A DNA stretch of 63,950 bases, filler included, from Octopus bimaculoides (lineage: Eukaryota): the NCBI RefSeq assembly GCF_001194135.2. It is 11 parts of 10 records of this genome, joined end to end, with 100 filler letters (N's around TTAATTAATTAA, not from the genome) between each part and the next. Parts side by side here need not be neighbours in the genome. Positions count along the whole stretch, not along the records: positions 33,191 to 45,087 come from NC_068990.1; 10 more parts are not named here. The stretch is one strand, 5' to 3'. Within the stretch, counting starts at the first letter, position 1. Each line of letters opens with the position of its first letter. The translations under genes were made by a program, and so were the position numbers. Of the stretch, positions 3,841 through 48,485 are shown in pieces. A model generated the notes under the pieces. The model had not been told where the DNA came from. It made no database searches and saw nothing but the letters and a program-made list of their open reading frames with translations.

Positions 3841-4075
3841 TTCTATATTTGAGAGATGAGGAATTATGTACATTATTTACCTTTGACGGATATTTGTCCT
3901 CATCTTGTTTGTTTGTTGTTAACGCAATGTTTCGGCTGATGTACTCTCCAGCCTTCATCAGGTTCGAAATTCCTCCGGGACACCTGATGAAGGCTGGAGA
4001 GTACATCAACCGAAACATTGTGTTAACAACAAATAAGATGAGGACAAATATCCGTCAAATGTAAATAATGTAAAT
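3841..4075. mobile_element. Fold-back (inverted pair) of the family E 3' module, each arm containing a degenerate hammerhead motif
   Basis: Arms 3871-3963 and 3982-4070 are reverse complements (4 substitutions plus one 4-bp indel) around an 18-nt spacer. Both match 44040-44170. Confidence 0.9.
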
Positions 4076-9066: not shown

Positions 9067-9247
9067 GTGTAAAAGAGGCGGGATTTGTGAAATGTTAAAG
9101 AGGAATTTACTGATATGAACTTATTCGGAGCCACATACAAATGTATGTAAGTATGTATGTATGTATGACAATTTGAAGTCATACACGTGTGCAAACACTA
9201 ATTCAAATAACACGCACACAAGAAGGGATAGAGAAACATCCAGGCAA

Positions 9248-9441
9248 TCAGCTCGACAGCAACCTCAACAACCGCCATACATACATACATACATACATGC
9301 ATACATACATACATACATGCATGCATGCATGCATACATACATACATGCATGCATGCATGCATACATACATACATACATACATACATACATAATGTCGACA
9401 TACAAAACATGCATGTGTATGCATGTATATATGTGTATGTG

Positions 9442-9758: not shown

Positions 9759-10279
9759 ACAAACAGACAGAGGGACAGACAGGCATGCAGACACGCAGGC
9801 AAGCCGACAGAGCAGTAGACTGACAGAGAGGCAGTGACACTAAAAGTAACGAGGACAATAATGCCAAGTTCAGGAAACGATATATATTTAGTCCGGATGT
9901 CTCCTCTTTTACTGCTTGATTAATTCGTCTGGTTCACATGGTCTGGGCATCTTTGGTTTGAAGGTCATGAAGTAATAACAACGATAGCAACAACAATAAT
10001 ATCAAAACCTGCCACAGCAACAACAATAGCAACAACAACAACATATCAAAATTTGCCGCAACACCGCCAACAACAGCAATATCAACAATATTAGTAAAAC
10101 GTATAGCAACAATAAAACCAACGCTTGTAAAAGCAACAATAAAACTAAGAATAATATGAAAGACCTTCAACAGTAACTTTTACAAGGATATCAAGAATAT
10201 CAAAACTTTAACAAGAATATCAATAACAATATGAACAGCTACGTCAGCAGCAACGATAATACGAAAATCTGCAGTAATG

Positions 10280-10313
<34 letters not shown>

Positions 10314-11478
10314 TAAAGACACCCTTCGGTTATGACTGACCATGGGATTGCACCTGGAAAGTTACCTACCGAGGCACAGGTCCGGGCAAGGTTGTTTATG
10401 GAAGACCGGCATTCACCCACGTATACCAGTCTCGGATCTTGTTCAAAACAGAGGCACCAGTATTTTCTTAACGAAACACTTTGAAACTTGGGACACTGGT
10501 AGAATGTGTCATATAAAACATCTTTTTCTCTTAGTCTTCTTAACAAAAAAAACGTACATCGCAAGTTATTTCATGTTAAAATTGTCGTATTTCTGTAATT
10601 TCAACCAATGACTGACGTCCATTCAGCCGAATAGAGTAAGTGCTGACTACGTAAACAAACGATTCTCGCGGTGATAAAATTATTATTTCTTTGTCAAAAA
10701 ATGGCTGAAGCATANNNNNNNNNNNNNNNNNNNNNNNNNNNNNNNNNNNNNNNNNNNNTTAATTAATTAANNNNNNNNNNNNNNNNNNNNNNNNNNNNNN
10801 NNNNNNNNNNNNNNAAGACGAAGACATATATATATATATATATATATATATGATAAAACGAATGGTTTACACCTGGTAGCTTATTGGTAAAGCACAGTCA
10901 CTTTCATAGTATTCGTTATGTATATGGCAAATGAAAGACGGGAGATGGAGTATACGAGAATTTATTATTAACCACAATTTTATCGGCGCATCTAGCATCG
11001 ATCTCTCGTGGCTTAACATTTAACAACTGGTTCAGGAACATCTGGCGGTGCAGATGTATCTCATCGAGTGATAAATATATACAACTCGTTAAAATAACTG
11101 TTCTACAATGTAACTTCTCATTTTGTAGAAAGAAAAGCAGCCAGACGAAGGAAATATCTTCAGCAATAAAGTCACAAATGGCAAAACAGGAACGAACACG
11201 CACGCAGCGAGAAAAGTAATAAAAATAACCGTTCACAGATATGGATGACTAAACACCCTCGGGCAAACTGCATGGCACGAGTACACTCGCTCATACAAGC
11301 ATCCGCGAAAATGCGAGCATACGCAGACGTGAGGTTTGATTCACTCATGATCACAAAACGAGTTAGTTGTCTACTTGGTGTTTGTAAGAATGAGGCGGTT
11401 AAAAGTAAACTTAAGTCATCCATACCTTAAAGTTAATAAAATTATGTTAACGGTTACTCAAAATTCATTCTAACTTCA

Positions 11479-11800
11479 TTATGCGAAAGTACATTTATAT
11501 GCATGTAGACATCTCAAGAGTTGTTCAGAAATTCTATTAATGATTTTCTCGCTAGTCCACAGAGTAGACAGGGATTCTTCGGTGTAGAGACAGCATCTTC
11601 TGGAAATTATATTGTATAGTTTCGCGTATCTTACTATGGACCATGTTATACTGTACTTCATTTTATCCTCCTTCAGTCGCCATACAAAATCTGCCAAAGA
11701 TGTTAAATGTCTTTTATTGATTGTCATACAATTTCCAAGAGATTGTACTTTCGCACAATGCAGTGAGAATGAATTTTGAGTAACTTTCAATTGCCGTATA
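11479..11800 (-). mobile_element. Penelope-like element, GIY-YIG C-terminal remnant
   Basis: TSLADFVWRLKEDKMKYSITWSIVRYAKLYNIISRRCCLYTEE...INRISEQLLRCLH fits the PLE C-terminal pattern T.LS..IW.LK.....Y.I.W.I...A..Y....KRC.LC..EK...LN.R.E....CRH. It is truncated by the gap at 11801. Confidence 0.8.
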
Positions 11801-12419
11801 NNNNNNNNNNNNNNNNNNNNNNNNNNNNNNNNNNNNNNNNNNNNNNNNNNNNNNNNNNNNNNNNNNNNNNNNNNNNNNNNNNNNNNNNNNNNNNNNNNNN
11901 NNNNNNNNNNNNNNNNNNNNNNNNNNNNNNNNNNNNNNNNNNNNNNNNNNNNNNNNNNNNNNNNNNNNNNNNNNNNNNNNNNNNNNNNNNNNNNNNNNNN
12001 NNNNNNNNNNNNNNNNNNNNNNNNNNNNNNNNNNNNNNNNNNNNNNNNNNNNNNNNNNNNNNNNNNNNNNNNNNNNNNNNNNNNNNNNNNNNNNNNNNNN
12101 NNNNNNNNNNNNNNNNNNNNNNNNNNNNNNNNNNNNNNNNNNNNNNNNNNNNNNNNNNNNNNNNNNNNNNNNNNNNNNNNNNNNNNNNNNNNNNNNNNNN
12201 NNNNNNNNNNNNNNNNNNNNNNNNNNNNNNNNNNNNNNNNNNNNNNNNNNNNNNNNNNNNNNNNNNNNNNNNNNNNNNNNNNNNNNNNNNNNNNNNNNNN
12301 NNNNNNNNNNNNNNNNNNNNNNNNNNNNNNNNNNNNNNNNNNNNNNNNNNNNNNNNNNNNNNNNNNNNNNNNNNNNNNNNNNNNNNNNNNNNNNNNNNNN
12401 NNNCAAACAGTTTTAAATA

Positions 12420-18756: not shown

Positions 18757-18905
18757 ACTTTCTACTATAGGCACAAGGCCCAAACTGTGACGAGGAGAGG
18801 ACTAGTCGATTACATCGATCCCAGTGTTTCACTGGTACTTAATTTATCGACCCCGAAAGGATGAAAGGCAAAGTCATAATTTCATTATTTGCCACAAGGG
18901 TGAAG
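18757..18905 (-). mobile_element. Truncated SINE B, containing the right copy of the 107-bp direct repeat
   Basis: TTTCTACTATAGGCACAAGGCC tail plus a body truncated at GCAAAGTC, the same junction as 17937. Confidence 0.85.
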
Positions 18906-33090: not shown

Positions 33091-33197
33091 NNNNNNNNNN
33101 NNNNNNNNNNNNNNNNNNNNNNNNNNNNNNNNNNTTAATTAATTAANNNNNNNNNNNNNNNNNNNNNNNNNNNNNNNNNNNNNNNNNNNNACGTTAG

Positions 33198-33338
33198 ATG
33201 TCCCCATGGTCTTTCTATTTGTGCACCCGAGGGAAGGACGAAGAATGTTGTCTACCAAGAGGACTCCAATGATAACAACGGCAACTTCAACTGCTCCAAT
33301 TTCAACTCCGCAATTTTTTCATCGTCTTGCCAGCCCAC
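33198..33338 (+). CDS. Candidate 141-nt internal coding exon of an unidentified gene
   Basis: TTAG acceptor at 33194-33197, strong donor AC|GTAAGT at 33339, length divisible by 3, open in two phases (VPMVFLFVHPREGRR... or CPHGLSICAPEGR...). The polypyrimidine tract is hidden by the adjacent gap. Confidence 0.3.
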
Positions 33339-33885
33339 GTAAGTCCAGTCTTGCTTTGTTCTCCTTACTAACTCACCATGACATTCATTTTGTTCTACCA
33401 AGATCCGTCGCCCAAACACCACTTCGTATCCACTTCTTCCTCATTTCTCTCTTCGCGTCGTTTTCTGACCGGGTGAAACCGGGTTTAGCTGCTAGTATAT
33501 ATATATATATGTATATATATATATACTAGAGTGTAACCCATCATATAACGGGCAACTTGAGAAATATGTTTTTGCCACCATGGGGAAATATCAAGATACA
33601 TGACATACATAAAATAATTATAATTTAACTTTTATTTAATTTCCTGCTTTTTATACAAAATAATGAAATGAAAACTAATTTTCAAAAGAAAAATATTTAT
33701 TACCTTAAACAAACAAGTCAAATTTCTCATTTGTGTATTTGCAATAAATAGGTTGATTTTTTTTCTAAGTTTTATCAATCTAATCGTAATTTACTCCATA
33801 GAAAACCTGGCTCTGAGAAGTTTCGTTTAAAAACGTGTTTTTCAGAAAGCTATCGATGCCTGTCACCGAATCTAGTATGATTTAT

Positions 33886-33918
<33 letters not shown>

Positions 33919-34104
33919 TTATCTATCAATCTATCTATCTATCTATCTCTCTATCTCTTTTCTTTCTTTCTTTCTTTCTTTCTATTACACACGCACATAC
34001 ACACACACTCTCTCTCCCCCTCTCTTTGTAAGATATAAAGTGTAGCTGGAGAAATCAATCATCGAAGCATCCAGCATTTGTATCGATTATTATTAAACAG
34101 TCAT

Positions 34105-34250
34105 GCAAATTTTACATCCTGAGTTCAAATGCCACCGGGGTCGATAAAATAAGTACCAGTCGATCACAGGAGTCGATGTAATCAACTGAACCTCCACCCC
34201 ACCCCCTAAAAAACATTACTGGCCTTGTGTCAAAATTTGAAAATAATATT
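34105..34250 (+). mobile_element. SINE family B, degenerate and partial
   Basis: CTGAGTTCAAATGCCACCGGGGTCGATAAAATAAGTACCAG...GGCCTTGTGTCAAAATTTGAAA. Confidence 0.75.
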
Positions 34251-34659
34251 GAATTTCTTTCTTCTACGCTGCGATTTGTTGTACGGCACAGGTCGACTCT
34301 GTCATTAACTTCTTAACGTTCTGAGATCGATAAGTCCCTATCAAAGTATTACAATCTTCCCTGCCTCATGTCTCATGCCAAACTAACAATTTATCGATCA
34401 CATACTAGATTCTAGTATTCATATTATTATAAAAGGAGGAATTGAATTTACGTAAGACTCACCCTTCACATTAACACGAAAATTTCCTTGATTTCCATTT
34501 AAGACATTGTGAAGTAAATAATATATTTCCATAACTTAGAGAATAAAATACTAAAAAAAAATCGAATGCCACATTATGAAGATCCTATAAGTTATTTCCT
34601 TATATTCTGAATTAATATTTTACCGTTTCCTTTTTCCATTACTCAATAAATTCCCAACT

Positions 34660-34817
34660 TCTGTCTTTACGTTCTGAGTTCAAATTCCGCTGAAGTCGAC
34701 TTTTCTTTCATCCTTTCGTGGTCGATAAATTAAGTACCAGTTGCATATTGGGGTCGATCTAATCGACCGGCCCCTTCCCCCCAAATTTCGGGTCTTGTCC
34801 CTAGAGTAGAAAAGAAT
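34660..34817 (+). mobile_element. SINE family B, 5'-truncated
   Basis: ACGTTCTGAGTTCAAATTCCGC...CTAGAGTAGAAAAGAAT. Confidence 0.85.
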
Positions 34818-35854
34818 AAATTGTCAACTTGCAGTACTTGGAATGTTTATGGAAGCAACTGTTTCCCCAATTCTGGAGAAATTTATGAACTGGGCCCTAA
34901 TAAGGATCCATTATATGGTTTGTATCAAATTTACTTTGGTTATGTGTTAATCATTTTATGCTTTAATAATCAGAAGAACTAAAAGAGTCAAACATCGGAA
35001 TATTCAGTCATGTGACCAGAGTTCATCGTCTGCAACCATCATTTTGTTGTGAAAGCAAAGGCAGAACACCTCCATCTTATGGGGTTTTTTCTTTTCAAAA
35101 TAAATACACGGATAACACAGAAGAAATCATAGAAAAGTGTTCGGTCCCAGAGGAACATTGTGTATTCTTTGCTCAAAGTTCCACATCTTCATTGATTTGA
35201 ATTTAGTAGACGGCCAAATAATTAAGTTAGCGACACCACACACAAGACAACTCTCAAAAGATCCAACTCATTTAGTTTTAAACAGAAATCATAAAGTAGT
35301 AACGACTCTCTACTGTAGACAGCAACAACGGATCAAATGTATCTTCTTTCTTCACAGTAATGAGTTCAATTCCTATAACGAGTGTAAGCTATGTTAATGT
35401 ACTTAGGAAAGGCATAAACATCACAAATTCCATTTATCCACCTTCTGAACTCAACGACACTAGGAGCCAATGAAACAGTGCTGCCACCGACTTCCCAACG
35501 CAAGCTGTTCCCTCATTGTGGTTCTCCCCGTGATGGATATCTCAGGTCGCCAACAAAGTCAAGCAATTGACTGCAACATTTATCGCCCTACTCCATAGAA
35601 TAAGTAAATAATTATTGCAAGTTATTTAGGTTTTATTTAAACCCCTTGTTTATGTAATAGAAGTTGTTTTAATTTTAGTTTCTTTCTGATCGTTTACTGC
35701 TTGGCTGTTGGTCATAAAATTTAACGTAATGTCGCAGAAAGTCTGTATAACGTGGACAATAAACTAGAAACTGTTCTGGTTAATGGTGTTAACAGTTAAA
35801 GCTTGTTATGAGAGTTATGGGCTGTACTTTGACGGTTCAGAGAGTGAAAGGGGA

Positions 35855-35891
<37 letters not shown>

Positions 35892-36494
35892 AATGTAAGA
35901 AAGACTGATAAACAAGGGCATTCATACATTTACACACATACATACATGCATACATACATACACACATACATACACACATACATACACACATACTGGCACG
36001 CAGGCATTCAGACATATATACGTACATAGCATACATACGTGCATGCATAATTGGGGTGGGGTGAAGCACATACAAAAANNNNNNNNNNNNNNNNNNNNNN
36101 NNNNNNNNNNNNNNNNNNNNNNNNNNNNNNNNNNNNNNNNNAAAAAGGGGAAGGAGAGAAAGTGTGGGTGACTCGGTGAAGAACGAGATACGGGGGGGGG
36201 GGAGTGGAGAGGAAAGAAGGATATTGGCAAAGAGTGGAATATGCGCGTGCGTGTAAAAGGAAGAAGTGTTGCAGAAAGGGAGAAAGAGGGAGAGGTGAGA
36301 GAGCGAGAGAAAGAGAGAGAGAGAAAGACAGAGAGAGAGAAAGACACAGAGAGAGAAAGACAGAGAAAGGAAGAGAGAGAGAAAGAAAGAAAGAAAGAAT
36401 GAATGAGAAAGAAAGAGAGCGAGAGAGAGAGAAAGAAAGAGAGAATGAAACAGGTAAACTACAGAGTAAAGAGTGAATACATTAATGTTCCTGT

Positions 36495-36698
36495 GTTTCA
36501 TAGTCAAAAGCCTAGTAATTTTGGAGGAGGGAGTAAGTCGATTACTACATCAACCCCAGTATCTAACTGGTACCTATTTTATCGACATCGGAAGGATGAA
36601 AGGCAAAGTAAACCACGGCGTAATTTGAACTCAGAATGTAAAGACGGATGAAATGCTGCTGAACATTTTGCCCGGCGTGCTAACGATTCTGGTAGCTC

Positions 36699-36699
<1 letters not shown>
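36495..36699 (-). mobile_element. SINE family B
   Basis: Reverse complement of the family B consensus. Confidence 0.85.
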
Positions 36700-36730
<31 letters not shown>

Positions 36731-36769
36731 TAACAACAATAACAACAACAACAACAACAATAGAAGGAT

Positions 36770-38155
36770 CCAACCAAAATTTACCAGAACAAGCATGGGA
36801 AGACATCACAATAGCAGACCTAAGGATGACATTCACGAAGGCTCATAAGTGGAAATCCCCCGGTAATGATAGGGTGCCAAATTTCTGGCTCGCATTGCTC
36901 CCATGCGCTCGCGAAAAGTTAGTTCAGCTACTCAATGAAATTATGAGAGGCCCTAAGAAAACCCCTGATTGGTTAACAAGTGGTATTATTTACCTTCTTC
37001 CAAACAATAATGAAACCAAATTTCTCCAAAGCTATCGGCCCATAACCTGTCTATCTAGTATGTATAAAATTTTAACATCCATCTTCGTGCAGAAAACCAT
37101 ACGCCTTTACGAGACAGAACGATATTTTCCCCACTGAACAAAAAAGGGTTCCGACGGGACTCATATGGATGCAAAGACCAACTCCTAATCAATCACATGA
37201 TCTTTGAGAAGTGTCATAACAAACGCAGAAATCTCAGTTCCGCATGGATTGATTATAAAAAGGCCTTTGGCAGCGTACCGTATTCATGGATCTTGAAATC
37301 CCTGGATATCTTCAAAATTTCTCCTGTGATTTGAAATTTCCTGAAGCACATGTCAGTGTGCAATACGAATCTCTATTAATACTATTCTAATGGAGTACTG
37401 ACCACAAAAACATTAATATCACCTGTGACATTGTTCAAGGTGACTCTGATCTTTAATTTTTTGCATAGCCCTAATATCCCTTACAAGTGAACTTAACAGA
37501 ACAGAGCATGGGTATAAAATTGACAAGATAATAAACCATCTATTTCACATGGATAACTTAAAACTCTATGGCAAAGACGATAATGAGCTTGAAGGACTAC
37601 TGCGTAATGTGAAGACGTTCAGTGATGAGATCGGGATGAACTTTAGTTTTGATAAATGTACCAAGGTCACTTTCCAGAAAGGGAAATTAACGACCTCACA
37701 TTCAGTGGTGTTAGATGTTGACACATAACAGAACTCGGACAGGAACAAACTGACAAATACCACGGAATAAACGAGGGTTTTGGCATTCAGCATGCAAGCA
37801 TGAAAGAGAAGATCAGGAAGGAATGTTACAGGAGAGTTCGAGCAATCCAAAAATATGAGTTAAATACACATAACAAAGTGTTAGCCATAAATTCCTTAGC
37901 AGTTCCGGTTATTTATAGTTTCAATGTATTGAAATGGAATATCAACGAAACAAAGATTGACAGGAAAATCCGTAAGCTGCTGACTTGCAATAAAATACAC
38001 CAACCGAAGGCAGACACAGATCGTCTTTACTTACCCAGAGCCCAAAGAAGTCGAGGCTTGACCCAATTTGAAATCTCTTACAAAACCACCACAATTAGAC
38101 TGGCCAAATATCTTGAAACATCTAATGACTGGATGCTACAACTCTTTAGAAACCG
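36770..38155 (+). mobile_element. R4/Dong-type LINE reverse transcriptase remnant starting at an (AAT)n(AAC)n array
   Basis: KAHKWKSPGNDRVPNFWL, YRPITCL, EQKG.RR.SYGCKDQLLIN, AWIDYKKAFGSVP.SWI, QGDS, NHLFHMDNLKLY (YMDD motif), NKVLAINSLAVPV, KADTDRLYLPR...RGL. Confidence 0.93.
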
Positions 38156-38344
38156 CATGTAAATTCTGTAATGTCCTTTTTGCCCTGAGGATATTTCACT
38201 CAAACTCTTAAAAAGTGCAAAATTATTTTATTAAATATATTTTGTAATTTGTATTGAGTATAAATTGATACAGTTGTAGGCTATGTTAATTAATTAAGAA
38301 TTAATTTATATCCATTATAACTCTCCATTTTCTTAATTATATAC

Positions 38345-38530
38345 TTACGTGTGTGTCTCTTTGTTTGTCCTCTTATCACCTCTTGACAACTGGTGTTGGC
38401 GTGCTTATACCCCGTAACATAGCGGTTCGACAAAAGGATACTAAGCTTAAAAAGAGCCCGGTTGTCGATTTGTTTGACTAAAATCCCCATCAAGGCTGCA
38501 TTCAAATGACTGAAACAAGGAAAAAGAAAA
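38345..38530 (+). mobile_element. SINE family A, 3' half
   Basis: CTTGACAACTGGTGTTGG...CCCCGTAACATAGCGGTTCG...AAATGACTGAAACAAG. Confidence 0.8.
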
Positions 38531-38832
38531 GATATTGTGTATATATATATATATATATNNNNNNNNNNNNNNNNNNNNNNNNNNNNNNNNNNNNNNNNNN
38601 NNNNNNNNNNNNNNNNNNNNNNNNNNNNNNNNNNNNNNNNNNNNNNNNNNNNNNNNNNNNNNNNNNNNNNNNNNNNNNNNNNNNNNNNNNNNNNNNNNNN
38701 NNNNNNNNNNNNNNNTATACTTACACACATTTATGCATAGATGTGTATTCTATAAAATATAACAATATAAAATGACATGACGCTGTGACGACAATGATAA
38801 AGCTGATACGTTATATACCTTATTTTGAAACA

Positions 38833-38910
38833 GGTGGTGGTTGTGGTGGTGGAGGTGGTTGTGGTGGTGGAGGTGGTTGTGGTGGTGGAGGTGGTTGTGG
38901 TGGTTGTGGC
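38833..38910 (+). repeat. GGT-rich 18-bp minisatellite (GGTGGTTGTGGTGGTGGA)n
   Basis: Three exact units visible. Confidence 0.9.
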
Positions 38911-39823
38911 GATGGGGTGGTGGTTTGCATTGTCTGGTTATGCTGACGATGCCCCTGGCGGAAGAAACCTTTTAAAATGATTAATATACCGTCCAGGGGT
39001 CAAGTAAGGTGACGTGTCAGGGACCTGGCATGTGTCGGTAGCGGAGTGGGGAAGGGGTAGAAGACTGACCAAATCCTACTTCTATCCTTCCCCTTCCCCG
39101 TCCCACGCCCCACGCTAATTGGTCGGTGTCAATTATTTCTCCTGGGATCGGAGAAACTAATAAACACAAAATGAAAGACTCACCACTGTGATTTGGGTGG
39201 TGATGGTGTTGTCGGCGGTGGTATGTGTGTGTGTGTGTTAGTATTCGTGTATTTGCATGTGTGTGTGTGTCTCTCAGGTGATGTTCATTGGGGCTAAATT
39301 GCTGTTATGTTATTATTTAGCCCAGGTCAGGCCTCATCTTGCAGACCAATGACTAAAGAGGCTCCATTTGTTACCACTCCTGTCATGGTGTATCTGGGAT
39401 AATGTTATGCAAAGAGTTCTTCCGTTTTTTATATATATTAGGGTTTTTAGCGTGTTAGGTGACCACCACTGATGCTACACTTTCCATTATTCTCAAACAA
39501 TGCTCTCCAGATCTTGATCCTACCTTTATCCCACCCCGTATCTCATCACCAACCTAAAACATATCCCAACACATAACACAGTGTCCCACTACTTTTGGCC
39601 ATCCATTATTGTTATCGTTGATAACAGCAAACATTGGACAGTTTCTGATACGAACATCGACCAAAAAGTTGTCCCCCAATGGACTCCACATGTCTCTTAG
39701 CACATTCTTTAACTACAAGAACAAAATGAACATTAATCCAATCTTAAAACATAGATGTAATAAGTCAAACATTTTTTGTTTAGTTTCCAAATGACTGGAA
39801 ACATTCCTTTCGACTTTAAATTC

Positions 39824-39877
39824 GACGATTTCACTGTGATCTGAATAAACGTTTATTCAGGTCACAGTGAAATCGTC
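39824..39877. repeat. 54-bp near-perfect palindrome, directly followed by a SINE A 3' tail (39878-39935)
   Basis: GACGATTTCACTGTGATCTGAATAAAC|GTTTATTCAGGTCACAGTGAAATCGTC, 26/27 pairs plus one G-T. Confidence 0.95.
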
Positions 39878-40015
39878 CTAAAGGCAGTGCTCCAGCATGG
39901 CCGCAGTCAAATGACTAAAACAAATAAAAGAAAGAGTAGGCACCAGACCAAAGATAACAGGAATATTCAATGCAAGATCGAATGGCGTCCTTATAGAAAG
40001 ACAAAATACTCGCGA

Positions 40016-40328
40016 AGCCCGTGGCTAAGTGGTTACGGTAATCGTCGTTAAGGTCATGAGTTCGATTTCCAACGGCGCGTTATATATCCTTCAGCAAGAC
40101 ACTTTATTTCACGTTCCTCCAGTCCACTCAGCTGGAAAAAATGAGAAGTGCCTGTTTTTCAAAAGACCAGCTTTGTCACATTCTACGCGACACTGAATCT
40201 CCCTGAGAACTATGTTAAGGGATACGCATGTCTGTGGAGTGCTCAGCCACTTTCACCTTAACTTCATGAGCAGGCTGTTTCGTTCAGCGGATCAACTGGA
40301 ACCCTCGTCGCAACCGACGGAGTGCCAC
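40016..40328 (+). mobile_element. SINE family D, full length
   Basis: GTGGCTAAGTGGTT (A box), GAGTTCGATTTCC (B box), 3' module ...GAACCCTCGTCGCAACCGACGGAGTGCCA. Confidence 0.85.
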
Positions 40329-40603
40329 AAGATATTCTCAAACGTAACAATAGCTTCACCTATTTCTCTAAGAGGTTTAAGGTTATGCAAAGTGGCCCTT
40401 TCCTTGAACCTTTTAACCGAACATTTGAAATTGATGTAAAATTCTGGATAGCCAGCCGCCTGTTCTCCCATGTGTTCCTTTAATAAAAGACTTAGTTTTA
40501 GTCGTCAGTTCTTACTTTTAAGAAACCCCCTTTTTGTTTTCAACAACTATCACGTTTTATTATTTTATCATTATTATTTTTTTTTTTGGTGGGGTGTGGT
40601 TAT

Positions 40604-40639
<36 letters not shown>

Positions 40640-41166
40640 TAGGAAAAAGGTAGAGAGAGAAAGAGAGAGACATAAGGGAGAGAAAGAATGAAATGGCTAC
40701 CGGAAAGGGGTAGAAAGTAGGGAAAGAGTTGGACAGTGGAGGAGCAAAATGGGGTCCAGGAAGCTTTGTCACGTGATCAATGTGTCACTGGGTAACCAGA
40801 TCGTATCAACAAAACGAGGGACCCAAAGTTGATTTACCAAAATATTTTGGGTCGAGTTTCTTAGCCACCGCCGCCCCACCTCTTATTAGCTCCGTTTTTG
40901 TAGTGGTGGTGGTGGTTTGCAAACAACAGGAGAAGGAGAGAGAAGTCGGACTTGGGGAGGTTATACAAATAAAGATCCCTAATTATGATATCGCGGTTGA
41001 TCTGTCAAACAAAAGACCGAGGAAGAAAGATGGCGAAGCGGCGGAGCGGCGGAGGGGTTGTTGGTGGAGTGATGGCAAGGGGGACTTCTCGTTTGACACA
41101 TACACCAATCACACATACACACATACAACTATACACACATATACCCACACGCACACGCGTGCACAT

Positions 41167-41205
<39 letters not shown>

Positions 41206-42018
41206 TATATGTGTGTATGAATGTATATATAAAGGGTCCGCAGTGGCGTACAAATTTCTATATTGGTACACACATACATATATATGTATATATGAATTTA
41301 TATATACATTTATATATATATATATATNNNNNNNNNNNNNNNNNNNNNNNNNNNNNNNNNNNNNNNNNNNNNNNNNNNNNNNNNNNNNNNNNNNNNNNNN
41401 NNNNNNNNNNNNNNNNNNNNNNNNNNNNNNNNNNNNNNNNNNNNNNNNNNNNNNNNNNNNNNNNNNNNNNNNNNNNNNNNNNNNNNNNNNNNNNNNNNNN
41501 NNNNNNNNNNNNNNNNNNNNNNNNNNNNNNNNNNNNNNNNNNNNNNNNNNNNNNNNNNNNNNNNNNNNNNNNNNNNNNNNNNNNNNNNNNNNNNNNNNNN
41601 NNNNNNNNNNNNNNNNNNNNNNNNNNNNNNNNNNNNNNNNNNNNNNNNNNNNNNNNNNNNNNNNNNNNNNNNNNNNNNNNNNNNNNNNNNNNNNNNNNNN
41701 NNNNNNNNNNNNNNNNNNNNNNNNNNNNNNNNNNNNNNNNNNNNNNNNNNNNNNNNNNNNNNNNNNNNNNNNNNNNNNNNNNNNNNNNNNNNNNNNNNNN
41801 NNNNNNNNNNNNNNNNNNNNNNNNNNNNNNNNNNNNNNNNNNNNNNNNNNNNNNNNNNNNNNNNNNNNNNNNNNNNNNNNNNNNNNNNNNNNNNNNNNNN
41901 NNNNNNNNNNNNNNNNNNNNNNNNNNNNNNNNNNNNNNNNNNNNNNNNNNNNNNNNNNNNNNNNNNNNNNNNNNNNNNNNNNNNNCATACACATAAATCA
42001 AAAATATATACGTCCTAT

Positions 42019-42064
<46 letters not shown>

Positions 42065-42339
42065 TTGTATCATATATACACCCTCTCACACACACTCAAT
42101 TAACCTCCGAAAACAAACCCATTTCACTCTCCTTATACAATCGTTAGAAGGAAGATGGTGGCCGAAGCGTGGTGTATTACGGTGCTGTAGCATGACCACC
42201 GGCGACACTCACACTGAGGTAGTGGGGGAGAGGTGAGAGTGTTGACACAAGCTGACAAAGACGTTGATTGAGTCGGTACATCTCATGTAACAAGGTGAGA
42301 CTAATTGAGCAACGGGCGACAGGCGGGGAAGAAGAGACT

Positions 42340-42790
42340 TGTGGGGGAGAGTGGGGGAGAGAGAGCAGAAGAAGAGGTAAGAGAGAGGGAAAGACAGGGA
42401 GAACAGATGGGGAGAAGGAAAAGGAAGAGACATGAGGGAGGAGTGGGAGAGAGAGAGAGAAATGAAGATGAAACAAAGAGATGGAAAGATGGGAAGAGAG
42501 CGGGGAACAGAAAGAGAGGAAGAACGAAAGAACGGAGAGAGGAAGAGGAGAAGGAGAAGGAGAAAGAGAGTGGGAGAGAGAAGGGAGAAGGGAATAAGAG
42601 GGAGAAATATGGCGAAATGGTTGGAGGTAAAGAGGGAATAGAGAGGAGTGGTATGAGGGAAAGAGAGAGAGGATTAGGAGCAGGACAAAGAGGCAGAGAA
42701 GGGGAGAGGAGGATGAGAAGTGTCAGGCCAGGAAGTAAGGAGGTAAAGAGAGGGAGAGAGAGTGAGGGAGGTAGAACGGGAGAAGGCGGT
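42340..42790. repeat. Purine-rich (GA-rich) low-complexity tract
   Basis: Almost pure A/G over about 450 bp. Confidence 0.9.
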
Positions 42791-42965
42791 GTCGTCTGCG
42801 AAGATCACCAAATTTTCGACCCAAAAGGAACAATGGATTCGGGACGGTTAGGGCTGTTTGTGTATTCATTTGATCAAATTAAACTTAGTTTGTCATTAAT
42901 GATGTATTTGTTTATCATTTATCTCATTGGGGGAACCACACAGAGTAAATAAACGAAGTGTGTAG

Positions 42966-43009
<44 letters not shown>

Positions 43010-43349
43010 CCTTTCTACAATAAGCACAAGGCAGGAAATGTGGGGAGCGGGTATATCGATAAATAACATCGTCGTGGTGATGGTGGCGGCGGAGGCGTAG
43101 GTGGTGGTGGTGGTGGTGGTGGTGGTGTTGATGGCAGTGACAGACGTGGCGGCGGTGATGGTGCTGGCAGGCTCAAATCATTCAGCAAGGAATTTATAGA
43201 GCAGAGAAAATGAAAGGAATCCTGATGACAAGAAAATGGAATTCTAAGAACGAAGCAAATTGATATTCAGCAACTTCAAAAAGTCGGAGACAAACGAGTA
43301 AAGAATCTCAGAGCGTATATCTCAACCTTTAAACCAAATTTACATTTAC

Positions 43350-43532
43350 AGTCGACGGATATTTATCCCCATCTTGTTTGTTGTTAACACAACATTTCGG
43401 CTGATATACCTTCCAGCCTTCATCAGGTGTCTTGGGGAAAATTTCAAACCTAGATTCACATTCCTAAAGTATTTTTCGATGTTGTTATTTTTCGATGTTG
43501 TTATTTTTCGATGTTGTTATTTTTCGATGTTG
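43350..43532 (-). mobile_element. Family E 3' module (headless), ending in four copies of a 16-bp repeat
   Basis: Reverse complement of 43995-44120; (TATTTTTCGATGTTGT)x4 at 43470-43532. Confidence 0.9.
43386..43431 (-). ncRNA. Minimal type I hammerhead ribozyme (Penelope-type), intact catalytic core
   Basis: Minus strand GACAC (stem I) CUGAUGA A GGCUG-GAAGGUAUAU-CAGCC (stem II) GAAA UG U U GUGUU (stem I partner). Stem III is the self-complementary AUGU with no loop and the cleavage triplet is GUU. Confidence 0.8.
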
Positions 43533-43745
43533 CTGGCAGAATCGTTAGCACGCTGGGCAAAATGCTTACCGGTATTTCGTCTGCCGTTACGTTCTGAGTT
43601 CAAATTCCGCCGAGGTCGAGTTTGCCGTTCATCTCCTTTCGGGGTCGATTAAATAAGTACCAGTTGCGCACTGGGGTCGATGTAATCGACTTAAGCCCTT
43701 TGTCCCCTCTATGTTTAGCCCCCTGAGGGCAATAAGGAAATATTA
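43533..43745 (+). mobile_element. SINE family B, young copy with a third tail variant
   Basis: GCTGGCAGAATCGTTAGCACG...GAGTTCAAATTCCGCCGAGG...; tail CTTAAGCCCTTTGTCCCCTC...AAGGAAATATTATT. Confidence 0.9.
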
Positions 43746-43850
43746 TTATTATTATTTTATGTTTGACTTTTGCTTTGCATTTGTACAAGTTGGATCCAAG
43801 AGACCTCAAGAGACAACAAGTTATTATTATTATTATTATTGTATACCTGT

Positions 43851-44170
43851 GGGCATATGGCGTAGTGGTTAAGAGCACGGGCTACTAACCCCAAGATTCC
43901 GAGTTCGATTCCAGGCAGTGACCTGAATAATAATAATAATAATAATAATGATGATAATAATAATAATAATAATAAGAAGAAGAAGAAGAAGATCGAAAAA
44001 TACCTTAGGAATGGGAACCCAGGTACGAAATTTCCCCAAGACACCTGGTGAAGGCTAGAGGGTATATCAGCCGAAACGTTGTGTTAACAACAAACAAGAT
44101 GAGGACAAATATCCGTCAATTGTAAATAATGTAAGTAATGTACATAATTCCTCATCTCTTAAATATAGAA
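43851..44170 (+). mobile_element. SINE family E, full length: tRNA-derived head, (AAT)n(AAG)n, and a 3' module with a hammerhead motif (44040-44085)
   Basis: A box TGGCGTAGTGGT (43858-43869), B box GAGTTCGATTCC (43901-43912). Hammerhead GACAC-CTGGTGA-A-GGCTAG..CAGCC-GAAA-CGT-T-GTGTT with core A6 changed to G. Confidence 0.88.
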
Positions 44171-44194
44171 GTGCTTTAAACCAAAGACTTGTGA

Positions 44195-44720
44195 AATCTT
44201 TGCAAAAATTCATGAAATCCGACTGAGTTTACTTCGAGACCAAAAAATGTAAAAAGTCATTGTGAAAAATCATCGAATCATTTAAAATAAAAGAAACGAG
44301 AAACCTTTTAAAACAGATTATGACGAACCTAAAACTTCATTCACGACCTACTGAGTTAAACGTGAGAAAATGTAACCGACCGGACTGTGGACTACACAAC
44401 TATTTATAAGAAAGTTACAGGATTCCATTTCAAAGATAGTCTTAAGGTCAAAATTAAAAATAAGTTTTCGCGCTGCACCGAAATGTTAATATATATTTTA
44501 ACATGCAGATGTTGTTGAAAATAATATATTGGTTAAACTGGCCTGACACACTGAACAAGAGCGACAGTGCATCGTCAGCAAATTAGACAACCATACACAA
44601 AAAATTCCCCTGGATCAACATATAGATAGTGTTTTAGCAGCCTAATGTTTTAAAAACGGAACAACAACAAGTAAAGAAATGTAATCTATAAACAAATATC
44701 ATCCCAAATTAAATGAAATA
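44195..44720 (+). mobile_element. Penelope-like GIY-YIG endonuclease remnant
   Basis: RNLLKQIMTNLKL, NVRKCNRPDCGLHNYL, KFSRCTEMLIYILTCRCC*K*YIG*TGLTH*TRATVHRQQIRQP, then KTEQQ...IIPN*. Confidence 0.85.
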
Positions 44721-44744
44721 TTTTAATAGACATGCTTTTATCAC

Positions 44745-45087
44745 GTTATCCGGGTATACAGAGGAGCTAACAAGAAATTTGAGGAGATTGTTGTCAAAGA
44801 TACAAATGGAACACAACCTAGATACCGTAACAAACAGTGGAATAGACTACAAATGATTAGTGACAAAACAAACAAAAAGACCACGTGGTACAATACCGAC
44901 AAGTTCCAGGGAGTAATGTTTGTGGACGCCACGCCACACGGAGAACTGGCCCGCAGATTTCGAAAAATCCTCAAAAGTACCAAGTTGAGGATAAATGTTA
45001 TAGAAAAACCAGGGAGATCAATTAGATCAATAATATGTAAAACATATCCCTTCAGAAGAACAAGGTATGTTGAGGAGAGTTGCATTG
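44745..45087 (+). mobile_element. Second, different Penelope-like element: RT thumb/linker remnant
   Basis: RYRNKQWNR...KKTTWY...VMFVDATPHGELARRFRKIL...INVIEKPGRSIRSIICKTYPF fits the PLE pattern VMFV..TP.G.LA......L....VVE..G......L.KS.PF. Confidence 0.75.
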
Positions 45088-48089: not shown

Positions 48090-48485
48090 TGACACTCAGT
48101 CGGTTACGACGACGAGGGTTCCGGTTGATCCGATCAACGGAACAATCTGCTAATGAAGTTAACGTGCAAGTGGCTGAAGTCTCCGTAGACACGCGTACCC
48201 TTAACGTAGTTCTCAGGAAGATTCAGCGTGATACAGAATGTGACTTTGAAATAGAGGTTGTACTCATTTTTTCCAGCTGAGTGGACTGGAACAACGTGAT
48301 ACAAAGTTCTATATTTCAGAGATGAGGAATTATGTACATTATTTGCATTATTTACATTTGACGGATATTTGTCCTCATCTTGTTTGTTGTTAACACAGCG
48401 TTTCGGCTGATATACCCTCCAAGCCTTCATCAGGTGTCTTGGGGAAAATTCGAACATGGTTTCTCATTCCTAAGATATTTTTCGA

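What the first reader, a model, noticed from the sequence alone, without database searches (positions are those of the whole stretch)
43386..43431. Intact minimal hammerhead ribozyme in a repeated octopus element (five copies in the window)
Seen: five copies (3921-3963 minus, 3979-4024 plus, 43386-43431 minus, 44040-44085 plus, 48392-48438 minus) give the consensus GACAC CUGAUGA A GGCUG-GAGGGUAUAU-CAGCC GAAA CGU U GUGUU. That is a 5-bp stem I, the hammerhead core CUGAUGA...GAAA, a 5-6 bp stem II, and a loopless palindromic stem III (ACGU) with a GUU cleavage triplet. Known: Penelope-like elements carry minimal type I hammerheads with a palindromic stem III that cleave as dimers, and an extra A between A9 and stem II is tolerated (as in the CChMVd plus hammerhead). 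Inference: the 43386 copy keeps every core nucleotide and should self-cleave, probably as a dimer. The other four copies carry lesions in the core or stems.
Basis: partly seen in the sequence, partly recalled or inferred. Interest (0 to 1): 0.88.

Follow-up and report, generated by a model that had tools for sequence, protein, structure and literature searches.

The report
Decayed Penelope-element hammerhead motif in octopus
The motif is real: it is the minimal hammerhead ribozyme that Penelope-like retrotransposons carry near their 3' end, seen here as two decaying, inverted fragment copies in an octopus genome, so it is an ordinary new example of a known kind and not a demonstrably working ribozyme.

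Summary
The sequence is there. 43386-43431 (-) reads GACAC CUGAUGA A GGCUGG-AAGGUAUA-UCAGCC GAAA UG U U GUGUU. The hammerhead core is complete, helix I has 5 bp, helix II has 6 bp, and one extra A follows A9. The partner copy at 44040-44085 (+) has A6->G and a helix II mismatch.

Chance is excluded. My descriptor gave 0 hits in 3000 simulated 11-kb sequences. A relaxed version gave 10 hits in 140 kb of this piece plus related loci, against 0.013 expected.

The two copies are the last ~140 nt of Penelope-like element (PLE) units, lying head-to-head. The right one is followed by a PLE RT/linker ORF fragment. An O. bimaculoides locus repeats this layout. Three other PLE lineages carry the same architecture with different stems.

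This matches the PLE min-HHR of Cervera & de la Peña 2014 feature by feature.

The hammerhead is no better conserved than its flanks, and the four octopus copies show no compensatory changes. A read-through transcript would bury it in a hairpin. Min-HHRs cleave poorly, and only as dimers. Verdict: real, a new member of a known kind, probably a relic. Low interest.

The parts
43386..43431 (-). L copy of the minimal type I hammerhead. On the RNA, 5'->3': helix I 5' strand 43431-43427; CUGAUGA 43426-43420; extra A 43419; helix II 43418-43413 paired with 43404-43399; loop II 43412-43405; GAAA 43398-43395; 15.2/16.2 = U,G at 43394-43393; U16.1 at 43392; U17 at 43391; predicted cleavage between 43391 and 43390; helix I 3' strand 43390-43386.
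   Evidence: Sequence read. Only descriptor hit in the piece; 0/3000 simulations gave a hit. Own covariance model scores it at 83.1 bits.
44040..44085 (+). R copy of the same hammerhead, inactivated: A6->G (CUGGUGA) and G10.5->A (an A.C mismatch in helix II). It keeps the ancestral ACGU palindrome.
43345..43480 (-). Left arm: the ~140-nt 3'-terminal segment of a PLE unit (pLTR end). It contains the L hammerhead, then the A/C-rich tract AACAACAAACAAG, and ends at TGTAAAT.
   Evidence: Inverted repeat I1/I21. Alignments A1 and A2. Homologous segment in O. bimaculoides L001 9113-9274.
43992..44131 (+). Right arm: the same ~140-nt PLE terminal segment in direct orientation, 91% identical to the left arm over the 100-nt core.
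   Evidence: Homologue at L001 9819-9924.
44748..45087 (+). 5'-truncated PLE ORF fragment (RT C-terminal region and the linker before the GIY-YIG endonuclease), cut by the piece's edge. It is 90% identical to O. bimaculoides LOC128248506 (P0001).
   Evidence: tblastn E=7e-66. 250 homologues, including 776-1047-aa RT+EN proteins. Named octopus relatives.
44453..44590 (+). Possible heavily decayed GIY-YIG remnant (..IYILTC..C.K.YIG.T..) with in-frame stops. Weakly supported and unresolved.
   Evidence: Pfam GIY-YIG E=0.76. Profile match i-E 0.005 at the correct profile positions. No tblastn hit.
43470..43532 (.). 16-nt tandem repeat (TATTTTTCGATGTTGT)n, grown out of the 5' end of the left arm.
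   Evidence: Direct repeat family D10; alignment A1.
43532..43700 (+). Octopus SINE copy inserted between the two arms. Not part of the hammerhead element.
   Evidence: Repeat families D8/D9/I2. 12 copies in L001 and 7 in L002, none in L003, L005 or L006.
43926..43991 (.). (AAT)n/(AAG)n microsatellite abutting the 5' side of the right arm. It is either the likely insertion context or a microsatellite internal to the pLTR.
   Evidence: The same (ATT)n context is seen in L001 and at the 3' ends of relatives.

Best explanation
The motif is the minimal type I hammerhead that canonical Penelope-like retrotransposons (RT plus C-terminal GIY-YIG endonuclease) carry in their pseudo-LTR, close to the 3' end of the unit.

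The window holds a typical PLE insertion scar in an octopus genome. Two ~140-nt 3'-terminal fragments lie head-to-head: one inverted 5'-truncated copy and one direct copy. On the direct side, a further 5'-truncated PLE unit follows.

In a live element (inferred, from published work) the transcript carries two such motifs. Helix III is too short to form within one motif (A15.1-U16.1 closing only the two nucleotides 15.2/16.2), so two motifs pair through the ACGU palindrome into a double hammerhead and cleave after GUU, trimming PLE RNA.

At this locus the copies are neutral relics. The R copy is dead (A6->G). The L copy keeps the core but has a weakened dimer palindrome (AUGU), has no same-strand partner, and would be sequestered by its inverted partner. 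Efficient self-cleavage here is therefore unlikely.
For: Shown here:
- Core and helices are present in the L copy.
- Chance is excluded.
- The L and R arms form a 100-nt, 91% inverted repeat.
- A PLE ORF fragment lies at 44748-45087 on the R strand.
- An independent O. bimaculoides locus has the same layout of inverted segment, direct segment and 5'-truncated PLE ORF, but with a different truncation point.
- In related PLEs from another organism (L003, L005, L006) the same architecture sits at the 3' end of the RT-EN ORF and in the inverted partner copy. Stem sequences are entirely different, yet all copies have one extra nucleotide after A9, G10.1, a Watson-Crick palindromic 15.2/16.2 (CG, AU or UA) and H17=U.
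- O. vulgaris PLE copies carry a degenerate HHR-like motif ~125 nt before the unit's 3' end.
- The HHR diverges as fast as its flanks, and the octopus copies show no compensatory changes.
- The hairpin sequesters the L copy in a read-through transcript, and the C15.2->U change costs 4.3 kcal/mol in the modelled dimer.

From the literature:
[quoted passage not shown] Pairs of motifs 100-700 bp apart on opposite strands are reported. No monomer activity and low dimer activity were found (PMC4209133).
- An inverted 5'-truncated copy next to the upstream pLTR is the typical PLE structure, and PLEs insert preferentially into microsatellites (10.1101/2021.04.23.441226).
- In the Anolis Poseidon element, reverse transcription starts in an AC-rich stem-loop shortly downstream of the HHR, and HHR mutants do not affect insertion in vitro (PMC11167929).
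Against: - I found no full-length octopus element that carries exactly this ~140-nt segment after its own endonuclease. The L001 ORF is not followed by a third copy.
- Three copies share the same 5' boundary next to microsatellites. That fits a discrete short element as well as it fits random 5' truncation.
- The 612 nt between the R arm and the ORF fragment are unexplained.
- Rfam gives no hammerhead hit, though this is uninformative.
- Between-lineage covariation comes from descriptor hits that were selected for pairing.
- Cleavage was not and could not be tested here. Nearest-neighbour energies ignore the tertiary contacts and protein cofactors that may drive activity in vivo.
Confidence: 0.85

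Rival explanations
1. One reading: the 43386 copy is a functional ribozyme that self-cleaves at this locus, as a dimer.
For: All core nucleotides are present, with 5-bp helix I and 6-bp helix II. AUGU can still self-pair through two wobble pairs. Min-HHR dimers show some cleavage in vitro.
Against: There is no second sense copy on the same strand in the piece. 44 of 46 nucleotides pair with the inverted arm in a spanning transcript. C15.2->U costs 4.3 kcal/mol in the double-hammerhead fold, which is already less stable than two monomers. The HHR is no more conserved than its flanks. Published min-HHR monomers are inactive.
Confidence: 0.1
2. The ~140-nt segment is a discrete non-autonomous element, a short PLE-dependent 'mini-retrozyme' or SINE-like unit mobilised through the PLE 3' end, and not a randomly 5'-truncated PLE copy.
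For: win_L, win_R and L001_L share the same 5' boundary (..ATC(G)AAAAA(T)AC..) next to microsatellites, and the same 3' end TGTAAAT(AAT). A 2026 preprint argues that animal retrozymes derive from PLE pLTRs.
Against: Only three informative copies are available. The 5' boundary coincides with (AAT)n tracts, where alignments break anyway, and O. vulgaris pLTRs contain internal microsatellites. There is no tandem head-to-tail array of the kind that defines retrozymes. L001_R is truncated at a different point.
Confidence: 0.12
3. A chance match to a loose hammerhead pattern inside an unrelated repeat.
For: The descriptor is short. Rfam models do not recognise the motif.
Against: 0/3000 simulations gave a hit. 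10 hits were observed against 0.013 expected. Hits sit at a fixed position relative to PLE ORF ends. Features the descriptor did not require are uniform: the inserted nucleotide, G10.1, palindromic 15.2/16.2 and H17=U.
Confidence: 0.01
4. The relevant feature is the inverted repeat itself: a long hairpin RNA that feeds small-RNA silencing of PLEs, with the hammerhead only a passenger.
For: The arms are 100-150 nt at 81-91% complementarity, and the spanning transcript folds into a long hairpin.
Against: There is no expression or small-RNA evidence. The inverted arrangement is a known by-product of PLE insertion. The arms decay at the neutral rate.
Confidence: 0.04

Closest known systems
Minimal hammerhead ribozymes (min-HHR) of metazoan Penelope-like elements (Cervera & de la Peña 2014, PMC4209133)
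   Same: Type I topology with an open helix I of 5 bp, and a long helix II (6 bp). One unpaired nucleotide lies between A9 and G10.1, and the G10.1-C11.1 pair is present. Helix III is reduced to A15.1-U16.1 plus a 2-nt palindrome (CG in the ancestral state). The motif sits in the terminal repeat of a PLE. Paired motifs a few hundred bp apart on opposite strands are reported for this family.
   Different: The host (octopus) and the sequence family are not in the literature I could search. Loop II is 8-10 nt. This particular copy has U at 15.2, so the palindrome pairs only through wobbles.
Hammerhead of the Anolis Poseidon PLE, PAc (PMC11167929)
   Same: The HHR lies a short distance upstream of an A/C-rich region, where PAc reverse transcription initiates and which defines the 3' end of inserted copies. 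Here AACAACAAACAAG follows helix I directly, and copies end ~50 nt after the cut site. An AUG sits in the CUGAUGA box.
   Different: In PAc the main ORF starts within the HHR. In the four octopus copies the frame from that AUG stops after 25-26 codons, and in relatives L003, L005 and L006 the HHR instead overlaps the ORF's stop codon.
Metazoan non-LTR retrozymes (Cervera & de la Peña 2020, PMC7229834)
   Same: Type I hammerhead in a short non-coding repeat, with a proposed dependence on PLE machinery.
   Different: Retrozymes are head-to-tail tandem arrays of ~170-400-bp units carrying canonical HHRs with loop-loop contacts, and they yield circRNAs. Here there is no tandem array, the helix III is minimal, and no loop 1 exists.
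CChMVd (+) hammerhead with an extra A between A9 and G10.1
   Same: An extra unpaired nucleotide at the same position. PMC4209133 cites De la Peña & Flores 2001 for unpaired nucleotides at this position in some canonical HHRs.
   Different: CChMVd is a type III viroid ribozyme with a full helix III and tertiary loop contacts. There is no evolutionary link.

Membership tests
Hammerhead ribozyme, PLE minimal type I variant | Catalytic core C3 U4 G5 A6 N7 G8 A9 ... G12 A13 A14, with A15.1, U16.1 and H17 (not G) | tested here: met
   The L copy has all of them. The R copy fails at A6 (G). L001_R fails at C3 (U). L001_L passes.
Hammerhead ribozyme, PLE minimal type I variant | Helix I (4-6 bp, open end) and helix II starting with G10.1-C11.1 | tested here: met
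   Helix I is GACAC/GUGUU, 5 bp including one G.U. Helix II is GGCUGG/UCAGCC, 6 bp including one G.U. The fold with helices I and II alone scores -12.0 kcal/mol against an MFE of -12.7.
Hammerhead ribozyme, PLE minimal type I variant | One unpaired nucleotide between A9 and G10.1 | tested here: met
   An A in all four octopus copies, and A or G in all PLE-associated hits from other lineages. The one hit without it, L004 1331-1400, is probably chance.
Hammerhead ribozyme, PLE minimal type I variant | Palindromic Watson-Crick 15.2/16.2, allowing a dimeric helix III | tested here: inconclusive
   CG in R, L001_L and L001_R, and CG, AU or UA in other lineages. The L copy has UG, so the self-dimer forms two wobble pairs, and the modelled dimer is 4.3 kcal/mol weaker.
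Hammerhead ribozyme, PLE minimal type I variant | Location in the terminal repeat (pLTR) of a Penelope-like element | tested here: met
   The R arm is followed on the same strand by a PLE ORF fragment. The same layout occurs in L001. In related PLEs the HHR lies at or just after the RT-EN ORF end. No full-length unit of this exact family was recovered.
Hammerhead ribozyme, PLE minimal type I variant | Stem covariation | tested here: inconclusive
   Within the octopus family there are 0 compensatory pairs and 5 of 44 cells are unpaired, and shuffles do as well. Between PLE lineages every stem position changes while pairing is kept, but those hits were selected for pairing.
Hammerhead ribozyme, PLE minimal type I variant | Site-specific self-cleavage after H17 | not testable with these tools
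   Needs in vitro transcription or mapping of RNA ends.
Rfam hammerhead families (Hammerhead_1 and relatives) | Covariance-model score at or above gathering | tested here: not met
   No hit at gathering or at E<=10. The control also fails: the clean PLE min-HHR in L003 gets only 22.2 bits to RAGATH-1-hammerhead, and nothing reaches gathering in 108 kb of control loci.
Canonical (C-terminal EN) Penelope-like element | Single ORF with RT followed by a linker and a GIY-YIG endonuclease | tested here: met
   The window holds only a 113-aa RT-C-terminal/linker fragment. Its homologues are RT+EN proteins of 776-1047 aa with a YVDD RT motif and a GIY-YIG-type C-terminus. RVT_1 scores 21.7 bits in P0053. 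GIY-YIG scores 29.3 bits, above the 22.6 cut-off, in L006.
Canonical (C-terminal EN) Penelope-like element | Partial-tandem or inverted 5'-truncated insertion structure, often at microsatellites | tested here: met
   Head-to-head arms. Head-to-head 5'-truncated copies in L003, L005, L006 and L004. (AAT)n, (AATC)n or (ATT)n at the ends.
Metazoan non-LTR retrozyme | Head-to-tail tandem repeats of a ~170-400-bp unit, each with a canonical type I HHR | tested here: not met
   No direct repeat of the segment exists; the two copies are inverted. The helix III is minimal and there is no loop 1.

The most novel reading that the evidence does not exclude
The ~140-nt hammerhead-bearing segment is a discrete, independently amplified non-autonomous element of octopus genomes. 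It would be a PLE-parasitic 'mini-retrozyme' with defined 5' and 3' ends that inserts at (AAT)n microsatellites, and whose min-HHR is still used, in trans-dimers, for RNA processing.
Probability: 0.1. Interest if true: 0.45.

Novelty: new member of a known kind. Interest (0 to 1): 0.2.

Why it matters
It adds octopus, and at least three further PLE lineages in the related loci, to the hosts of PLE minimal hammerheads. It reproduces without hand-curation the published hallmarks: the extra nucleotide after A9, G10.1, palindromic 15.2/16.2, H17=U, and a position near the unit's 3' end.

It also shows that Rfam models miss this whole class, which matters for automated scans.

It does not open a new question. 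The biological role of PLE hammerheads remains unresolved, since they are dispensable for insertion in vitro in the Anolis element, and this locus is a decayed copy that cannot settle the matter.

Tried and rejected
- Rfam at gathering, and at E<=10 on the piece and on 141-nt slices, gave no hammerhead hit. Positive controls show Rfam is blind to this class.
- A word-indexed homologue search with the 78-aa ORF found nothing. The exhaustive HMMER search was needed instead.
- I had read 44170-44735 by eye as a decayed 'linker + GIY-YIG + decayed hammerhead' unit. blastn of the HHR segment against it is not significant (E 0.3-0.9). tblastn finds nothing. Only a weak GIY-YIG-like stretch survives. 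I dropped it as a claim.
- I expected a third HHR segment after the endonuclease of the L001 ORF. None is there.
- An exact look-up of a window ORF, meant to recover the source contig beyond 45087, found nothing on record.
- Pattern scans of viral and metagenome contigs for more copies gave 0 matches.
- L004 1331-1400 is a descriptor hit with a CCUAGG loop III. Its paralogue lacks the core, so it is probably chance.
- ARAGORN found no tRNA in the piece.

Full report
**Observation**

The piece (33191-45087) contains two copies of the motif.
- L copy, 43386-43431 on the minus strand: GACAC CUGAUGA A GGCUGG AAGGUAUA UCAGCC GAAA UG U U GUGUU.
- R copy, 44040-44085 on the plus strand: GACAC CUGGUGA A GGCUAG AGGGUAUA UCAGCC GAAA CG U U GUGUU.

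The L copy has every invariant hammerhead nucleotide (C3-A9, G12-A14, A15.1, U16.1, H17=U). Helix I has 5 bp, helix II has 6 bp starting with G10.1-C11.1, and one extra A follows A9.

A loop II base differs, and position 15.2 is U, not C. So the 'stem III palindrome' is AUGU, not ACGU. Both O. bimaculoides copies and the R copy have CG there, so the U is a derived CpG->TpG change.

The R copy has A6->G and a helix II mismatch.

**Chance**

A descriptor for the minimal hammerhead required:
- helix I of at least 4 bp;
- the CUGAUGA box;
- 0-1 inserted nucleotide;
- helix II of at least 4 bp;
- GAAA, then 2 or 4 nucleotides, then U and H (not G).

It hits only the L copy in the piece. It hit nothing in 3000 first-order Markov simulations of the piece.

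With position 7 free (CUGANGA), there are 10 hits in the 140.5 kb made up of the piece and six related loci, against 0.013 expected.

Rfam gives no hammerhead match at gathering, nor at E<=10 on 141-nt slices. It equally fails on clean PLE min-HHRs in control loci. The negative result therefore says nothing.

**Context in the window**

The two hammerheads sit in the middle of a 100-nt, 91% inverted repeat (43344-43443 / 44028-44127). A weaker extension brings each arm to about 140 nt. Both arms run 5'->3' away from each other.

Each arm ends about 50 nt after the predicted cut site. After helix I comes an A/C-rich tract (AACAACAAACAAG), and the arm closes with TGTAAAT. Each arm abuts a microsatellite-like repeat at its 5' side. 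Between the arms lie later insertions: an abundant octopus SINE and a tRNA-like piece.

On the R strand, 612 nt downstream, an open frame runs to the piece's edge (44748-45087). An exhaustive HMMER search found 250 homologues. The best is 90% identical (tblastn) and is annotated in Octopus bimaculoides. Longer homologues of 776 and 1047 aa carry a YVDD reverse-transcriptase motif followed by a linker and a GIY-YIG-type C-terminus, with weak Pfam support. This is the ORF of a canonical Penelope-like element, and the window fragment is its RT-C-terminal/linker part.

The 612-nt spacer has no significant match to PLE proteins or to the hammerhead segment. It contains only a weak GIY-YIG-like stretch. 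I leave it unresolved.

**Related loci**

- **O. bimaculoides (L001).** The locus encoding the best homologue has the same layout. An inverted hammerhead segment lies at 9113-9274 and a direct one at 9819-9924. A 5'-truncated PLE ORF follows directly, truncated at a different residue from the window copy. The flanks are otherwise unrelated, so this is an independent insertion of the same kind.
- **Another organism (L003, L005, L006).** These loci lack the octopus SINE. Head-to-head 5'-truncated PLE copies each end in a perfect minimal hammerhead, UUCUCA CUGAAGA G GCCGCC GAAG GGCGGU GAAA AU U U UGAGGA, which overlaps the ORF's stop codon.
- **Two further PLE remnants in L006.** They carry GUGA CUGAAGA A GAUCU..AGAUC GAAA UA U U UCAC, about 195 nt after a GIY-YIG ORF (Pfam 29.3 bits), and UUAAA CUGACGA A GAUU..AAUC GAAA CG U U UUUAA, about 60 nt before an (ATT)n tract.
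- **O. vulgaris (L004).** In this PLE family a degenerate hammerhead-like motif (A9->C) lies about 125 nt before the shared 3' end of the pseudo-LTR.

Across these lineages the stems are entirely different, but the architecture is fixed. Features my descriptor did not demand are uniform among the PLE-associated hits: one inserted nucleotide, G10.1, a Watson-Crick palindromic 15.2/16.2, and H17=U. The covariation itself is partly circular because hits were selected for pairing. The enrichment, the fixed position relative to PLE ORF ends, and the unrequired features are not circular.

**Comparison with what is known**

Cervera & de la Peña (2014, PMC4209133) described minimal hammerheads in the terminal repeats of metazoan PLEs. 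Their features were:
- helix I of 4-5 bp;
- a long helix II;
- conserved G10.1-C11.1;
- palindromic 15.2-16.2;
- pairs of motifs 100-700 bp apart on opposite strands;
- no cleavage as monomers and weak cleavage as dimers.

Craig et al. describe the inverted 5'-truncated copy next to the upstream pseudo-LTR as the typical PLE structure, and report a bias for microsatellite targets.

For the Anolis Poseidon element (PMC11167929), reverse transcription starts in an AC-rich stem-loop shortly downstream of the hammerhead. That fixes the 3' end of inserted copies. Hammerhead mutants still insert in vitro, and no RNA-seq ends were found at the cut site.

The octopus segment matches all of this. PLEs are known to be abundant in octopus genomes (PMC13282606). 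I found no paper reporting their hammerheads.

**Is the L copy a working ribozyme?**

The evidence points to a relic.
- Between the two arms, the hammerhead differs at 4 of 46 positions. The flanks differ at 6 of 48 and 4 of 42.
- The four octopus copies show only disruptive stem changes and no compensatory ones.
- The modelled double-hammerhead fold of the L sequence scores -18.0 kcal/mol, against -22.3 for the C15.2 consensus. Both are less stable than two monomers, at about -25. This agrees with the low activity reported for this class.
- There is no second sense copy on the same strand in the piece.
- In a transcript that spans both arms, 44 of the 46 nucleotides pair with the antisense arm.

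Residual activity in trans cannot be excluded computationally.

**Alternatives**

- **Discrete ~140-nt non-autonomous element.** Three copies share one 5' boundary, which would fit this reading. But the boundary coincides with microsatellite tracts, and only three copies are informative. I give it about 0.1.
- **Retrozyme.** Membership fails because there is no tandem array.
- **Chance.** Excluded by the simulations above.

**Verdict**

This is a real hammerhead motif of the known PLE minimal type. It is a new member (octopus) of a known kind and is most likely an inactive remnant at this locus. Interest is low.

Noticed in passing
window 43532-43700 (+); also 34105-34190, 34660-34771, 36528-36698: A ~165-nt SINE-like repeat. 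It has 12 copies in 21 kb of O. bimaculoides (L001), 7 in O. sinensis (L002) and 1 in O. vulgaris (L004), and none in L003, L005 or L006. This places the window in an octopus genome.
   Followed up: partly
window 43845-43930: A tRNA-like stretch (GGCGTAGTGGTTAAG...GAGTTCGATTCC, with A- and B-box-like motifs) flanked by (ATT)n on both sides. ARAGORN does not call it, and Rfam gives no tRNA hit at E<=10. It has no other copy in the piece or the fetched loci.
   Followed up: partly
window 43470-43532: Four copies of a 16-nt tandem repeat (TATTTTTCGATGTTGT) whose unit is the 5'-terminal sequence of the left hammerhead arm, so the arm's end has been locally amplified.
   Followed up: no
window 43346-43459 (-): A 37-codon frame runs through the L hammerhead, with an in-frame AUG inside the CUGAUGA box. 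It ends at the TAA in the terminal TGTAAAT. This recalls the Anolis PLE, whose ORF starts inside the hammerhead, but all four octopus copies stop after 25-26 codons.
   Followed up: partly
L003 11358-11401 (+); L005 10978-11017 (+); L006 11202-11245 (+): In these related PLEs the minimal hammerhead overlaps the last ~10 codons and the stop codon of the RT-EN ORF. The UGA spans the last base of helix II and the first two bases of the GAAA box. RNA structure and coding sequence are therefore superimposed.
   Followed up: partly
L004 7321-8992 versus 10329-12000: A perfect (100%) 1.67-kb inverted duplication around head-to-head PLE copies in the O. vulgaris assembly. It is either a very recent palindromic insertion structure or an assembly artefact.
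   Followed up: no
L004 1331-1400 (+): A hammerhead-like descriptor hit with a 6-nt palindromic loop III (CCUAGG) and a 33-nt loop II. Its 77%-identical paralogue at 18769-18873 lacks the CUGAUGA box, so it is probably chance.
   Followed up: yes
window 36826-37137 (+), 37800-38162 (+): ORF fragments of a non-LTR (LINE-type) reverse transcriptase (weak RVT_1 match, E=0.12), unrelated to the PLE.
   Followed up: partly
window 36079-36141, 38559-38715, 41328-41985: Runs of N inside the piece (63, 157 and 658 nt), each embedded in microsatellite or low-complexity sequence. ORFs listed across them are artefacts.
   Followed up: no
window 44453-44590 (+): A GIY-YIG-like stretch with in-frame stops (IYILTC..C.K.YIG.T...R..H), lying between the R arm and the PLE ORF fragment. 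It may be a second, much older PLE remnant. Support is weak (Pfam E=0.76; profile i-E 0.005).
   Followed up: partly
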